DNA of 63,488 nt, counting the filler, from Octopus bimaculoides (taxonomy: Eukaryota), in the NCBI RefSeq assembly GCF_001194135.2. It is 4 parts of 2 records of this genome, joined end to end, with 100 filler letters (N's around TTAATTAATTAA, not from the genome) between each part and the next. Parts side by side here need not be neighbours in the genome. Positions count along the whole stretch, not along the records: positions 26,433 to 42,954 come from NC_068997.1; 3 more parts are not named here. One strand, written 5' to 3'. The position numbers and the translations under genes were made by a program. How positions within the stretch are numbered: the first letter of the stretch is position 1; each line of letters begins with the position of its first letter. Below the pieces are notes generated by a model, which worked only from the letters and a program-made list of their open reading frames with translations, did not search any database and had not been told where the DNA came from. This document shows, piece by piece, positions 26,389 through 42,714 of this stretch.

Positions 26389-26500
26389 NNNNNNNNNNNN
26401 NNNNNNNNNNNNNNNNNNNNNNNNNNNNNNNNGTGTGTGTGCGTGTGTGTGAGCGTGTGTGCTTGTGTGTGTGTGTGCGTGTGTGTGTGTGTTTGTGTCC

Positions 26501-26712
26501 ACGTTTGTCTTCCCACCACCGCTTGACATCCGGTGTTGCTGTGTTTACGTCTCCGTAACTTAGCGGTTCGGCCGAAAGAAAAACGATAGAATAAGTAGCA
26601 GGTTTTTAAAAAATAAGTACTGAGGACGATTCATTCGGCTAAATTCTTCAAGGCGTTGCCCCAGCATGGCCGCAGTCTGATGACAGAAACAAGTAAAAAA
26701 AAAATGAAAAGA
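26501..26712 (+). mobile_element. SINE family A, 3' half
   Basis: Follows (TG)n and a gap; homologous to 18470-18647. Confidence 0.8.
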
Positions 26713-32153: not shown

Positions 32154-32262
32154 GGCTTTGGTTGTCCTCAAGCTATAGTAGAAGTCATTTACTCAAGGTT
32201 CCACGCAGTGTGACTGAACCTGGAGCTATGTAGTTGTAAAGCAAACTTTTCTCCACACAGCC
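32154..32262 (-). mobile_element. SINE family A head
   Basis: Inverted relative to the copy at 32377. Confidence 0.75.
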
Positions 32263-32376
32263 TCGTCTATTTGCACATGTATATATAGGGTTCTTGTCAG
32301 AGGATATGGTGGTGGAGAAAATATCATAACGAGGATATAAATACATATACATACAAACATACACACATACATATAT

Positions 32377-32680
32377 CGCAGCTGTGTGGGAAGAAGCTTG
32401 ATTCTCAACCACAAGGTTCCAGGTTCAGTCCCATTGCGTGTCACCTTGCGCAAGTGTCTTCTACTATAGCTTCGGAACGACCACGTTTATGTGTTTATGT
32501 GTTTGTGTTTATCCCCCATCATCACTTGACAACCGATGGTGGTGTGTTTTGTCACTGCAACCTAGCAGATCGGCAAAAGAGACTGATAGAATAAGTACTA
32601 CACTTAGAAAAACCCTTTAAGGTGGTGCCCCTGCATGGCCGCAATCAAATGAAAGAAAACAAATAAAAATAATAAAAAAG
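32377..32680 (+). mobile_element. SINE family A with internal deletions
   Basis: Head and 3' half are recognisable. Confidence 0.8.
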
Positions 32681-34935: not shown

Positions 34936-35084
34936 TAAGGCTTAAAATCTTCATAAGAGGGTTGGTTTGTGAAATGCCATGTTTTCTTTCAGCGGAAAGT
35001 AAAAGAAGTGAAACAAGTAAAAGAAGAAAAAATATGTGTAGGAGAAGCATGATGATCATATTTCAAAAGCTTTTGATTATTTAA

Positions 35085-35291
35085 CCCCACTTAAATATAG
35101 ATGTTCTGTTAGAACAAACTATACTGCACTAGATGCCATGAGAGACATTCTCATACTGGCTTTGTGCGCAATATACACTGTAGCGATATAAACATGAGTG
35201 CATTTTGCACCAAGAGCCAATATGAGAGTGTCACTCATGACATCTACCGCAGTATAGTTTGTTCTAACAGAACATCCACATTTAAGTGAGG
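35085..35291. mobile_element. piggyBac-like foldback MITE (207 bp)
   Basis: TTAA/ATAA flanks, CCCCAC/CCTCAC termini, and ~80-bp inverted arms that pair almost to the centre. Confidence 0.75.
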
Positions 35292-35548
35292 ATAAATATC
35301 GCCTTCAGAGTCTGGCACACGGTCATCAAGTCCGGTGCGCAGAGAGTAAGACAATTACATAGACACCAGTGCCCGACTGGTACTTATTTTATCGTCTCCG
35401 AAAGGATGAAAAGGAAAACTCAACCTCTGGTTATTAATACAAATAATTATACCCTCTTAAACGGTACGCAAGGGAACAATTTGAGGCAATTTCTTCTAAC
35501 ATATTCATCAAAACGACGTGTGTGTGAGTAATTGAAAAAAAAAAATCG

Positions 35549-35642
35549 TGCCCCAGGTGAGGATCGAACTCACGACCTTCAGATTCCTCTAACATTTTGC
35601 TTGATTATGAGACTGACGCGCTGCCTACTGCGCTACCGAGGC
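35549..35642 (-). tRNA. tRNA-Met-CAT: tRNA-Met(CAT), elongator, with a 21-nt intron (35585-35605)
   Basis: Minus strand GCCTCGGTAGCGCAGTAGGCAGCGCGTCAGTCTCATA-[ATCAAGCAAAATGTTAGAGGA]-ATCTGAAGGTCGTGAGTTCGATCCTCACCTGGGGCA. Removing the intron gives a 73-nt cloverleaf. Anticodon CAT at 35607-35609. G1-C72, TTCGATC T-loop and U31-U39 indicate elongator rather than initiator. An 11-T Pol III terminator lies 3 nt downstream (35535-35545). Confidence 0.96.
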
Positions 35643-35688
35643 TACCGAGCAGGCCGTTCTACTTTTGTGATAATACTTTAGCTATCGA

Positions 35689-35906
35689 AAGCAGCGAGGT
35701 GGCGGAAACGTTAGCACGCCGGGCGAAATGTTTAGCAGTATTATCGTCTGTATTACGTCCTGAGTTCAAATTCCGCCGAGGGCGTCTTTGCCTTTCATCC
35801 TTTCGGCGTAGATAAATTAAGTACCAGCTGCGTACTGAAGTTGATCTAATCGACTGGTCCCCTCCCCCCAAAATTTCGGGCCTTGTGCTTAGAGTAAAAA
35901 AGAATA
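35689..35906 (+). mobile_element. SINE family B, least degenerate copy
   Basis: B-box-like gagttcaaattcc with full core and tail. Starts 46 bp upstream of tRNA-Met, divergent. Confidence 0.85.
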
Positions 35907-37351: not shown

Positions 37352-37424
37352 CATCCCTGGTGGGATTCGAACCCACGACCTCTGGATTAGAAGTCCAGCG
37401 CGCTATCCGCTGCGCTACAGGGAC
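37352..37424 (-). tRNA. tRNA-Arg-TCT: tRNA-Arg(TCT), intronless, copy 1
   Basis: GTCCCTGTAGCGCAGCGGATAGCGCGCTGGACTTCTAATCCAGAGGTCGTGGGTTCGAATCCCACCAGGGATG. Complete 73-nt cloverleaf with A and B boxes, anticodon at 37389-37391, 7-T terminator at 37339-37345. Confidence 0.96.
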
Positions 37425-37947: not shown

Positions 37948-37989
37948 TTGATCAAGAAACTGACGCGCTGCCAACTGCGCTACCGCGGT
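37948..37989 (-). pseudogene. 5'-half tRNA-Met pseudogene including the first intron bases
   Basis: 36/42 identity to 35601-35642 (ACCGCGGTAGCGCAGTTGGCAGCGCGTCAGTTTCTTGATCAA). No T-arm, B box or 3' acceptor strand follows. Confidence 0.8.
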
Positions 37990-38484
37990 CAATATTTTAT
38001 GATTATAGTCGCGGTATAATTTTGCGAGCGTATCTTTGTGTGTGTGTGTGTGTGTGTGTNNNNNNNNNNNNNNNNNNNNNNNNNNNNNNNNNNNNNNNNN
38101 NNNNNNNNNNNNNNNNNNNNNNNNNNNNNNNNNNNNNNNNNNNNNNNNNNNNNNNNNNNTTATAATTAATGGTCATTACATATTTATGTAATTATGTCTT
38201 GTATATCACTCTGTATAATAATAAAAAAATTAAATACAGATCACAACCATTTAGATCGAACGACGTGATCGATTAAAATTTGTGAAGGGCGTCCCCCAGT
38301 ATGGCCGCTGTCCAATGGCTAGAATCCGAAAAAGAACAAAGGGAAAAAGCCTAGTTCATTGGTTTTCAATTTTCATAGAGAGAACATTTGAAAAAATTAC
38401 AAACAGTTTAAATGAAGTGGAATGAAAATAATTTTCATAAAAATTTAATCTTAAATAGAGAAAATTAGAAAAAAAAAGGTGAAT

Positions 38485-38557
38485 CATCCCTGGTGGGATT
38501 CGAACCCACGACCTCTGGATTAGAAGTCCAGCGCGCTATCCCCTGCGCTACAGGGAC
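38485..38557 (-). tRNA. tRNA-Arg-TCT: tRNA-Arg(TCT), intronless, copy 2
   Basis: Identical to copy 1 at 72/73 positions (D-loop AGGGG versus AGCGG). Oligo-T terminator about 7 nt downstream. Confidence 0.94.
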
Positions 38558-39167: not shown

Positions 39168-39360
39168 GACCAGCAATTTTGGGGAAGGGATTAGTTGATT
39201 ATATTGCTCCAGTACTCAACTGGTACTTATTTTATCGATCTCCCAAAAGATGAAAGACAAAGTCGACCTCAGCAGAATTTGAACTCAGAACGTAAAGACG
39301 GACGAAATGCCGCAAAGCATTTTGTCCGGCATGCTAACGATTTTGCCAGCTCGCCGCCTT
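39168..39360 (-). mobile_element. SINE family B
   Basis: Reverse complement of the 35689-35906 family. Confidence 0.85.
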
Positions 39361-39944
39361 TTTTTGTGTGACAGTAATATTAAATCCACTCTAGTTCTTG
39401 GAGGGATTTGAAACAAGTAAAAGAGTAAAAGAGAGCATATCTATTTTAGTCGCAGGTGTGGCTGTGTAGTAAGAGATGCAGGTGTGACCTGTGCTGGTCA
39501 AGGAAAGGTCAGTGCTTTGTTTAGGCTTTGACCTACATTACTGACAAAAGTCTATATAACAGAGAGAATTTCCTATCTCTTTATTGTGTCAGCCAGACCA
39601 ACGAGCGACACGCTCTTTTGCGTCAGCCTTAACTAAGAACAGCACTTCCCTTCGCTCGACATGCAAAGAGAGGCTTTCGGCCGCAAGAAAGGCGATGCTA
39701 CCTTTACCCTTTCTTCCTTTCTAGTCAGCACCGTGCATTCCTTACTCTTTCACTCTCTGCTGACAGACAACCTTTTTCTACACTATCAACTACGGACCAG
39801 TGAGCCAACCTTGTTGTCACTGTCACTACAATTAGTACTGTATTTCTAACTACCTGTCGGGCAAACGAATAAATATATGTAAATAATATGGTTAATAATA
39901 TTTCTTCCATCTTGGTGTTCTTTCTTCCATGTTTACTGGTTTTT

Positions 39945-40178
39945 CCGCCGCGAGAACCGTTAAGTTACGGGGACGTAAACACACCAGCATCGGTTGTCAA
40001 GCGATGTTGAGGGGACAAACACAGACACACAAACACACACACACATATATATATATATACATATATACGACGGGCTTTGGTCGGCCCGAGGCTATAGTAG
40101 AAGACACTTGCCCAAGGTGCCGCGCAGTGGGACTGAACCCGGAACCATGTGGTTGGTAAGCAAGCTACTTACCACACA
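39945..40178 (-). mobile_element. SINE family A, 5' part and linker
   Basis: Head well preserved; linker (CA)/(TA). Confidence 0.85.
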
Positions 40179-42508: not shown

Positions 42509-42714
42509 AAGGCGGTGTGCTGACAGAATCGTTAACACGCCGGACAAAATGCTTAACGGCACTTCGTTTTAAGTTCTCAGCTCAAATTCCACCGAGGCTA
42601 ACTCTACCTTTCATCCCTTTCGGGGTTGCTAAAATAAGACCCGTTGATCACTGAGGTCGATGTTATCAACTTATCTCTTTTCCAAAATTACAGGCCTTGT
42701 GCTAAAATTTGAAA

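What the first reader, a model, noticed from the sequence alone, without database searches (positions are those of the whole stretch)
35549..35642. Intron-containing elongator tRNA-Met(CAT) in an animal genome
Seen: a 21-nt insert at the canonical 37/38 position of an otherwise complete elongator tRNA-Met with a strong terminator. C32 can pair with the antepenultimate intron G (the A-I pair), extended by U33-A and C34-G, as expected for a TSEN substrate. Known: in human, Drosophila and C. elegans the intron-bearing isotypes are mainly Tyr-GTA, Ile-TAT and Leu-CAA (plus Arg-TCT in vertebrates), while Met-CAT introns are typical of plants. Here the neighbouring Arg-TCT genes lack introns and Met has one. 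Inference: a lineage-specific intron gain or retention that could yield an undescribed tricRNA.
Basis: partly seen in the sequence, partly recalled or inferred. Interest (0 to 1): 0.75.

Follow-up and report, generated by a model that had tools for sequence, protein, structure and literature searches.

The report
Intron-bearing elongator methionine tRNA gene
This is a real, intact-looking methionine tRNA gene interrupted by a 21-base intron. The same kind of intron turns up in over a hundred animal-type genes from public data, including a named stony coral, so it is an ordinary member of a widespread but little-discussed class and not a one-lineage novelty.

Summary
Observation confirmed. On the minus strand, 35549-35642 is a complete elongator tRNA-Met(CAU) gene. 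It has a 21-nt intron at the canonical 37/38 site (Rfam tRNA 52 bits, E 7e-9; ARAGORN with intron search), A and B boxes, a T11 terminator 3 nt after A73, and the C32:G(-3) anticodon-intron pair.

The "lineage-specific gain" reading is not supported. Of these, 108 are animal-type, giving 83 distinct introns of 13-24 nt (the window's own intron counted). They share the window's signature:
- an AUC start, which copies exon A38-U39-C40 (83/83, 82/83, 77/83);
- G(-3), A(-4), G(-5) opposite C32-U33-C34 (82/83, 75/83, 62/83).

One group was traced to stony corals. A syntenic intron-bearing gene lies in NCBI assembly GCA_052425735.1, next to a gene annotated Oculina patagonica.

No intronless elongator Met gene lies on any fetched contig. 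A decayed second copy in the window (37948-37988) also keeps the intron start.

Recent papers state that such introns are absent from, or lost in, animals. The class is therefore under-described, but this gene is a typical member. Splicing, a circular intron RNA and the source organism were not testable here.

The parts
35549..35642 (-). Complete elongator pre-tRNA-Met(CAU) gene, 94 nt
   Evidence: Rfam RF00005 at 52 bits, E 7.2e-9. ARAGORN -i calls Met(cat) with intron i(37,21).
35606..35642 (-). 5' exon, tRNA positions 1-37. Anticodon CAT at 35607-35609; A box TAGCGCAGTAGG at 35624-35635.
   Evidence: Sequence read-out. Identical to the 5' halves of many animal-type genes.
35585..35605 (-). 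21-nt intron ATCAAGCAAAATGTTAGAGGA at position 37/38. The AUC start repeats exon A38-U39-C40. GAG at -5..-3 pairs with C34-U33-C32.
   Evidence: The same signature is seen in 83 distinct animal-type introns.
35549..35584 (-). 3' exon, tRNA positions 38-73. B box GAGTTCGATCC at 35561-35571. T54 is present, so this is the elongator and not the initiator type.
   Evidence: The initiator genes on the metagenome loci have a different sequence (AGCAGAGTGGCGCAG...GGATCGAAACC).
35535..35545 (-). Pol III terminator, a run of 11 T starting 3 nt after the discriminator A73
   Evidence: All 99 animal-type relatives with enough trailer have TTTT within 25 nt, at a median offset of 5 nt.
37948..37988 (-). 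Decayed second copy: tRNA-Met positions 2-37 plus the first 5 intron bases (..GTCAGTTTCTTGATCAA). 36 of 41 bases are identical to the intact gene; the 3' half is missing.
   Evidence: BLAST of the piece against the loci flagged this stretch. Sequence; local alignment.
37352..37424 (-). Intronless tRNA-Arg(TCT), copy 1 of a 1133-bp tandem duplication
   Evidence: Repeat family D17.
38485..38557 (-). Intronless tRNA-Arg(TCT), copy 2

Best explanation
A functional, RNA polymerase III-transcribed nuclear gene for elongator tRNA-Met(CAU) with a canonical 21-nt intron between positions 37 and 38.

The precursor keeps the mature cloverleaf. It extends the anticodon stem with an anticodon-intron helix (C32-G, U33-A, C34-G), which leaves the 3' splice site in a 3-nt bulge. 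Inferred steps: TSEN, the tRNA splicing endonuclease, measures from the mature domain and uses the C32:G(-3) pair to cut both sites. An RTCB-type ligase then joins the exons, and possibly the intron ends as well.

The intron is not private to this lineage. It belongs to a conserved class of animal elongator-Met introns defined by position 37/38, an AUC start and a GAG near the 3' end, with a variable interior. The class is present at least in stony corals and in many unnamed marine and host-associated animals. It is therefore most likely old in Metazoa and lost in vertebrates, insects and nematodes.

The anatomy and the distribution are shown. Splicing, ligation and any function of the intron are inferred.
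For: Gene integrity:
- Rfam and ARAGORN calls.
- A and B boxes and the T11 terminator.
- A cloverleaf-compatible fold at the MFE energy (-26.9 vs -27.0 kcal/mol), containing the anticodon-intron helix.
- The spliced sequence is identical to that of two genes on L014, whose Arg-TCT is only 85% identical to the window's. The unusual acceptor stem is therefore conserved across organisms.

The class:
- 108 are animal-type; 83 distinct introns counting the window's own.
- +1 A 83/83, +2 U 82/83, +3 C 77/83; -3 G 82/83, -4 A 75/83, -5 G 62/83.
- G is rare at the neighbouring positions: 3/83 at -2 and 7/83 at -6.
- The fungal-type and other Met introns from the same scan do not start with AUC.

Named lineage:
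- The ankyrin ORF on L110 is 74% identical to a protein annotated [Oculina patagonica] and 71% identical to one annotated [Pocillopora verrucosa].
- The Oculina locus (GCA_052425735.1, CM126636.1) carries a Met gene with a 14-nt intron in the same relative position. That gene scores 57 bits against Rfam tRNA.
- Oculina is a scleractinian cnidarian.

Other points:
- No intronless elongator Met gene occurs on any of 123 loci, while 12 initiator Met genes there are intronless.
- All 99 relatives with enough trailer have a terminator.
- The decayed copy in the window keeps the intron start.
- The TSEN rules (position 37/38, the anticodon-intron pair, the ruler mechanism) are taken from PMC10485636.
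Against: - There are no expression or splicing data.
- The central helix has an A35 x A(-6) mismatch. In the predicted fold the 5' splice site sits inside a short helix and not in a clean 3-nt bulge.
- The precursor's fold energy is not unusual (z = -1.24).
- The source organism and the total number of Met genes in its genome, with or without introns, are unknown.
- Apart from the coral group, the taxa behind the metagenome contigs are unnamed, so 'widespread in animals' rests on tRNA type and on a few animal genes on the contigs (a Gfi-type zinc finger; Prp8).
- The contigs were selected for carrying an intron. The lack of intronless copies on them is therefore biased evidence.
Confidence: 0.85

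Rival explanations
1. Lineage-specific gain: the intron was inserted recently in this (mollusc) lineage and is a peculiarity of it.
For: Recent papers list only Tyr, Ile-UAU, Leu-CAA and Arg-UCU as intron-bearing in Metazoa and call Met introns possibly 'lost in animals'. The interior of the intron matches none of the 82 other distinct introns. No metagenome contig shares repeats with the window.
Against: The same position and the same AUC...GAG ends occur in 108 animal-type genes, including a named coral. A decayed paralogue in the window already carried the intron.
Confidence: 0.05
2. Dead copy: a pseudogene whose anticodon loop was disrupted by a 21-bp insertion and which is not processed to a working tRNA.
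For: ARAGORN in default mode does not call the gene. The Rfam score is about 20 bits lower than for the Arg genes. A truly decayed copy lies 2.3 kb away. The region is rich in SINEs (short interspersed repeats) and microsatellites.
Against: Both exons are intact and identical to genes in another organism (L014). The lower score is explained by the insertion alone. The insert has exactly the conserved end signature needed for the anticodon-intron pair. The promoter boxes and the terminator are intact.
Confidence: 0.07
3. Repeated independent gains: animal lineages acquired Met introns separately, and the shared AUC/GAG ends reflect common constraints (TSEN and the CUC of the loop) and not common descent.
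For: Intron interiors and lengths (13-24 nt) cannot be aligned between groups. GAG is forced by pairing with the invariant C32-U33-C34. In corals the intron starts with a 7-nt copy of the 3' exon (ATCTGAA), which looks like a local duplication.
Against: TSEN does not require AUC at +1..+3: the fungal-type and other Met introns from the same scan start otherwise. Yet AUC is nearly invariant in animal-type genes. Short, fast-evolving interiors are expected even under common descent.
Confidence: 0.2

Closest known systems
Elongator tRNA-Met introns of land plants, green and red algae
   Same: Same isoacceptor and same canonical 37/38 position. Short length, cut by TSEN. Described as one of only two intron-bearing families in land plants (PMC13578239).
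   Different: The exon sequence here is of animal type. The animal class starts with AUC, which from my memory the plant introns do not (not tested here). The literature treats the Met intron as enriched in primary-plastid lineages and possibly lost in animals.
Canonical metazoan intron-bearing tRNAs (Tyr-GUA, Ile-UAU, Leu-CAA; Arg-UCU in vertebrates)
   Same: Position 37/38, an anticodon-intron helix with the 32:(-3) pair, Pol III gene architecture, and the expected TSEN/RTCB pathway. Intron-bearing Tyr-GTA and Ile-TAT genes sit next to intron-bearing Met genes on several contigs.
   Different: Different isoacceptor. No intron-dependent modification is known for animal tRNA-Met. The isotype is missing from published lists of metazoan tRNA introns.
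Haloferax volcanii elongator pre-tRNA-Met (intron-bearing; C34 2'-O-methylated by a box C/D guide)
   Same: Same tRNA species and an intron next to the anticodon. Cm34 also exists in vertebrate tRNA-Met, made by SNORD97/SCARNA97, which have homologues in insects, plants and Ciona (PMC6601510).
   Different: Archaeal bulge-helix-bulge intron and archaeal enzymes. Any link between the animal intron and Cm34 is my speculation. Human Cm34 is made on an intronless tRNA.
tRNA intronic circular RNAs (tricRNAs) of Drosophila and C. elegans
   Same: If RTCB joins the ends of this intron, a circle would form by the same route (PMC4536317).
   Different: The characterised tricRNAs come from much longer introns (about 40-250 nt). 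A 21-nt circle is unproven and would be missed by standard libraries. Nothing was tested here.

Membership tests
Nuclear elongator tRNA-Met(CAU) gene | Cloverleaf tRNA matching the tRNA covariance model | tested here: met
   RF00005 at 52 bits against a gathering score of 29, full length. ARAGORN -i gives a cloverleaf.
Nuclear elongator tRNA-Met(CAU) gene | Anticodon CAT and elongator, not initiator, body | tested here: met
   CAT at 35607-35609. The T-loop is TTCGATC, with T54. The body differs from the animal initiator genes found on the loci (AGCAGAGTGGCGCAG...GATCGAAAC). It differs at 4 positions from the human elongator sequence as I recall it; 3 of the 4 lie in acceptor base pairs 6:67 and 7:66, which stay paired (G7-C66 for U7-A66, G6-U67 for G6-C67) (the human sequence is from memory).
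Nuclear elongator tRNA-Met(CAU) gene | Pol III internal promoter (A and B boxes) and an oligo-T terminator | tested here: met
   TAGCGCAGTAGG, GAGTTCGATCC, and T11 3 nt downstream.
Nuclear elongator tRNA-Met(CAU) gene | Expressed, spliced and aminoacylated with methionine | not testable with these tools
   No transcript data are available.
Canonical eukaryotic (TSEN-type) tRNA intron | Located between positions 37 and 38 | tested here: met
   The boundary is ambiguous by up to three bases because AUC repeats at the intron start and the 3' exon start, but 37/38 is compatible.
Canonical eukaryotic (TSEN-type) tRNA intron | Anticodon-intron (A-I) base pair between position 32 and intron position -3 | tested here: met
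   C32:G(-3) is present and extended by U33:A and C34:G. G at -3 occurs in 82/83 related introns.
Canonical eukaryotic (TSEN-type) tRNA intron | 3' splice site in a 3-nt bulge, with the mature domain preserved | tested here: met
   The constrained and the free folds both give a bulge A(-1)/A38/U39 and an intact cloverleaf at -26.9 and -27.0 kcal/mol. This is a prediction only.
Canonical eukaryotic (TSEN-type) tRNA intron | 5' splice site in a single-stranded bulge (full bulge-helix-bulge) | tested here: inconclusive
   The predicted fold pairs U36-A37-i1-i2 with the interior of the intron, and A35 x A(-6) is a mismatch. Eukaryotic TSEN tolerates this (PMC10485636).
Animal elongator-Met intron class (defined here: AUC...GAG, 13-24 nt) | Intron starts AUC, has G(-3), A(-4), G(-5), is 13-24 nt long, and sits in animal-type exons | tested here: met
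   ATC...GAGGA, 21 nt, set against the class statistics.
tricRNA | Intron released as a covalently closed circle | not testable with these tools
   Needs RNA data (RNase R treatment, junction reads).

The most novel reading that the evidence does not exclude
The near-invariant AUC at the start of the animal Met intron copies A38-U39-C40. The precursor therefore still presents the uninterrupted stretch G30-C40 (GUCUCAUAAUC).

This would let a SNORD97-type box C/D guide pair with the intron-opened anticodon arm and 2'-O-methylate C34 before splicing. That would be an intron-assisted Cm34 pathway like the one in Haloferax. It would be ancestral in animals and would have been replaced or relaxed in vertebrates, insects and nematodes, which lost the intron.

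It would also mean that the elongator-Met intron is an ancient eukaryotic feature retained in many animals, contrary to the current 'lost in animals' view.
Probability: 0.15. Interest if true: 0.65.

Novelty: new member of a known kind. Interest (0 to 1): 0.4.

Why it matters
Lists of which animal tRNAs carry introns come mostly from vertebrates, insects and nematodes. Two recent papers state that introns are essentially absent from other metazoan tRNAs, or that the elongator-Met intron may have been lost in animals.

This gene, the coral locus and more than a hundred environmental relatives show that many invertebrates keep a Met intron with a conserved end signature. That changes the inferred history from a plant speciality to a likely old eukaryotic or metazoan feature. 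It also adds a candidate for an intron-dependent step in tRNA-Met maturation.

For this single window, however, the gene is simply a normal member of that class.

Tried and rejected
Attempts to name the source organism all failed:
- Exact look-ups of two window ORFs found nothing.
- A full-text search for SINE sequence strings found nothing.
- The window shares no repeats with the 120 loci.

My impression that the two SINE families are the abundant octopus SINEs is memory only and is not used as evidence.

Attempts to name the metagenome samples:
- Paper searches for contig prefixes and IMG ids found nothing.
- The zinc-finger exon of group B (L017) has about 20 full-length orthologues, none of them named, so the annelid attribution (memory: gutless oligochaete metagenomes) stays unverified.
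- The Pocillopora paralogue locus has no Met gene within 10 kb.

Other dead ends:
- The viral-contig scan gave 0 hits.
- The scan of bacterial and archaeal genomes gave one host-contaminant contig in a SUP05 symbiont assembly whose host is unknown.
- Mollusc and annelid genome papers do not report tRNA introns.
- One literature search was badly framed and uninformative.
- The microRNA-family matches in the window (mir-297/466 and others) all fall below the gathering scores and lie on microsatellites, so I rejected them.
- No ORF in the piece looks like a real gene.

Full report
**1. What is there**

The finding's coordinates hold a tRNA gene on the minus strand. Rfam's tRNA model matches 35549-35642(-) over its full length at 52 bits (gathering score 29, E 7.2e-9), with 23 unaligned bases in the anticodon loop. 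ARAGORN in its default mode reports only the two Arg-TCT genes. With intron search switched on it calls tRNA-Met(cat) with a 21-nt intron.

Read out directly, the gene consists of:
- 5' exon GCCTCGGTAGCGCAGTAGGCAGCGCGTCAGTCTCATA (35606-35642);
- intron ATCAAGCAAAATGTTAGAGGA (35585-35605);
- 3' exon ATCTGAAGGTCGTGAGTTCGATCCTCACCTGGGGCA (35549-35584);
- trailer CGA and then eleven T (35535-35545).

The A box (TAGCGCAGTAGG) and the B box (GAGTTCGATCC) are intact. The body is the elongator type. It has T54, and it differs from the animal initiator genes that I later found on related contigs. Against the human elongator sequence as I recall it, the spliced tRNA differs at four positions. Three of them lie in acceptor pairs 6:67 and 7:66, which stay paired (the human sequence is from memory).

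**2. Structure of the precursor**

The free minimum-energy fold (-27.0 kcal/mol) and a fold constrained to the cloverleaf (-26.9) are essentially the same. The acceptor, D and T arms and the anticodon stem are kept. The anticodon stem is extended by U31-G, C32-G(-3), U33-A(-4) and C34-G(-5), and the 3' splice site lies in the 3-nt bulge A(-1)/A38/U39.

Two weaker points remain. A35 faces A(-6), and the 5' splice site is drawn inside a short helix and not in a clean bulge. The fold energy is not unusual against shuffles (z = -1.24). According to the TSEN review (TSEN is the tRNA splicing endonuclease), eukaryotic splice-site choice relies on a ruler from the mature domain plus the proximal A-I pair, and the rest of the helix is relaxed (PMC10485636). 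These points therefore do not argue against splicing.

**3. Surroundings**

The piece has 38% G+C and is made largely of microsatellites and SINE (short interspersed repeat) copies, with three N gaps. No ORF looks like a gene. Two intronless Arg-TCT genes lie in a 1133-bp tandem duplication.

Between them, at 37948-37988(-), lies a decayed 5' half of a second Met gene: CCGCGGTAGCGCAGTTGGCAGCGCGTCAGTTTCTTGATCAA. It is 36/41 identical to the intact gene, and it runs five bases into the intron, ATCAA. The intron therefore predates that duplication.

**4. Related sequences**

I scanned public metagenome contigs for GTCAGTCTCATA, then 4-34 free bases, then ATCTGAAGGTCNNNNGTTCRA. Counting the one contig from the prokaryote scan and one of the two coral genome loci (L121), 108 genes are of animal type (GCCT.G.TAGCGCAGTAGG.AGCGC ... 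TCCTCAC..GGGGCA). Twelve are fungal-like (GCTTC...), twelve belong to an odd type with a second insertion in the T-loop, and four are other.

With the window added, the animal-type genes give 83 distinct introns of 13-24 nt. Their interiors cannot be aligned, but their ends are almost fixed:

| Intron position | Base | Count |
|---|---|---|
| +1 | A | 83/83 |
| +2 | U | 82/83 |
| +3 | C | 77/83 |
| -3 | G | 82/83 |
| -4 | A | 75/83 |
| -5 | G | 62/83 |

For comparison, G occurs in only 3/83 at -2 and 7/83 at -6. The 3' block is the complement of C32-U33-C34. The 5' block repeats exon positions 38-40. The window's intron (AUC...GAGGA, 21 nt) has every one of these features.

The fungal-like and other Met introns from the same scan start with other bases, so the splicing enzyme as such does not demand AUC. 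All 99 animal-type genes with enough trailer have TTTT within 25 nt, at a median offset of 5 nt.

On the 123 loci there is not one intronless elongator-Met gene, while twelve initiator-Met genes are intronless. Contigs with several Met genes have introns in all of them. This is biased evidence, because the contigs were picked for carrying an intron.

Two genes on L014 give exactly the window's spliced sequence, although that contig's Arg-TCT is only 85% identical to the window's. The window's acceptor-stem variant is therefore conserved across organisms.

**5. Which organisms**

One group (13-14-nt introns such as AUCUGAAUUAGAA, exons identical to the vertebrate type) could be named. Contig L110 carries such a gene 1.2 kb from a 599-codon ankyrin-repeat ORF. 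That ORF's best named relatives are a protein annotated [Oculina patagonica] (74% identity) and one annotated [Pocillopora verrucosa] (71%). Unnamed relatives at 82-99% sit on genome-sized contigs.

The Oculina gene lies in NCBI assembly GCA_052425735.1 (CM126636.1). About 1.5 kb from it, in the same relative position, is an elongator-Met gene with the 14-nt intron AUCUGAAAUCAGAC, scoring 57 bits against Rfam tRNA. A third assembly (ENA ERZ26858540) shows the same arrangement. Oculina is a scleractinian cnidarian. The intron is thus conserved at an orthologous locus among stony corals.

A second large group (GCCTAGG... exons, 16-23-nt introns) sits next to a Gfi/senseless-type zinc-finger exon. 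That exon has about twenty unnamed orthologues at 54-66% identity in host-associated metagenomes, so this group is animal but unnamed. My recollection that these samples are gutless oligochaete worms could not be checked.

Other groups come from marine plankton and sediment assemblies. One contig is host contamination in a SUP05 symbiont assembly.

The window's own organism could not be identified. Its SINEs look to me like those of octopus, but that is memory only.

**6. Comparison with what is known**

- A 2025 PNAS paper notes only 'kingdom-specific patterns' for tM(CAU).
- I found no paper in the held library that describes Met-CAT introns in animals.

The class is therefore visible in public sequence data but is not discussed.

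By kind, this is an ordinary canonical tRNA intron: position 37/38, an A-I pair, and a bulged 3' site. I file the gene as a new member of a known kind and not as a new mechanism.

**7. Mechanism and open points**

Shown: the gene anatomy, the predicted precursor structure, and the conservation and distribution of the class.

Inferred: transcription by Pol III, cleavage by TSEN, ligation by an RTCB-type ligase, and circularisation of the 21-nt intron. The last is possible by the route described for tricRNAs (tRNA intronic circular RNAs), but those come from much longer introns.

Why the intron is kept is unknown. The fixed AUC suggests an idea. It preserves the continuous stretch G30-C40 on the precursor, which is what a box C/D guide for C34 would pair with. 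Three facts make this conceivable:
- Cm34 of elongator tRNA-Met is made by SNORD97/SCARNA97 in humans.
- A homologous guide exists in insects, plants and Ciona.
- In Haloferax the same methylation is guided on an intron-bearing precursor.

I rate this at about 15%. Nothing here tests it.

**8. Verdict**

The 'lineage-specific novelty' is not. What remains of interest is the breadth and the conserved signature of the animal Met-intron class.

Noticed in passing
window 37948-37988 (-): Decayed 5' half of a second elongator-Met gene that still carries the first five intron bases. It lies between the two Arg-TCT genes, close to the N gap at 38060-38159.
   Followed up: yes
window 35643-35654 (-): Immediately upstream of the gene, GCCTGCTCGGTA nearly repeats the gene's first bases (GCCTCGGTA). 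It may be a small slippage duplication or chance.
   Followed up: no
window 35690-35790 (+), 39302-39360, 42509-42567; and 26479-26584, 32159-32483, 39939-40178: Copies of two SINE parts: a tRNA-like head (..GTTCAAATTCCGCCGAGG..CTTTGCCTTTCATCC) and a body carrying a CA/TA microsatellite (..GGCTATAGTAGAAGACACTTGCCCAAGGTGCC..GAACCCGGAACCATGTGGTT). From memory they resemble the abundant octopus SINEs. This could not be verified with the tools.
   Followed up: partly
window 35078-35179 / 35197-35298: A 102-nt inverted repeat, 84% complementary, with arms 17 nt apart, about 250 bp downstream of the Met gene. Possibly a small foldback element.
   Followed up: no
L010 965-1055, L018 1617-1705, L019 2304-2388, L089 1408-1498, L097 1837-1927: Animal-type tRNA-Gly(GCC) genes with 14-18-nt introns at 37/38. 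They are clustered with intron-bearing Tyr-GTA and Met genes and an initiator Met, on marine plankton contigs. Gly-GCC is not in the published metazoan intron set.
   Followed up: no
L033 1114-1216, L063 921-1023: A Lys-CTT-like gene (..GGGACTCTTA[28 nt]ATCCCAGGG..) with a 28-nt intron, which ARAGORN miscalls as Thr-AGT. It lies near an intron-bearing Met gene and an initiator Met.
   Followed up: no
L004, L012, L036, L054, L067, L086, L090, L094, L096, L106, L107, L117: Met(CAT) genes of a GTCCTTGTAGCTCAG type that have both a 15-17-nt 37/38 intron and an extra insertion of about 11 nt in the T-loop (GGTTCGA[GTGTATCGGCC]ACCCCAC). They look like two-intron tRNA genes of a non-animal (perhaps algal) eukaryote.
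   Followed up: no
L078 1-2998, L118 1-5810: A 2.9-kb unit, tandemly repeated on L118, with at least eight tRNA genes per unit (Thr, Ala, Arg-TCG, Val, Glu, Phe, Ile-AAT and the intron-bearing Met). ARAGORN in default mode miscalls the Met gene as SeC on L078.
   Followed up: no
L014 258-2103, L056 615-1405: A conserved cluster of Met(intron), Arg-TCT (intronless), Ile-TAT (14-nt intron) and Gly-CCC. The window shows the same Met/Arg-TCT neighbourhood although the organisms differ.
   Followed up: partly
L013, L039, L110, L121, L122 (coral group): Coral Met introns begin with a 7-nt copy of the 3' exon (ATCTGAA). In the 14-nt form they are palindromic (UCUGAUAUCAGA), so the precursor could alternatively form a mature-like anticodon stem-loop with intron bases.
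   Followed up: no
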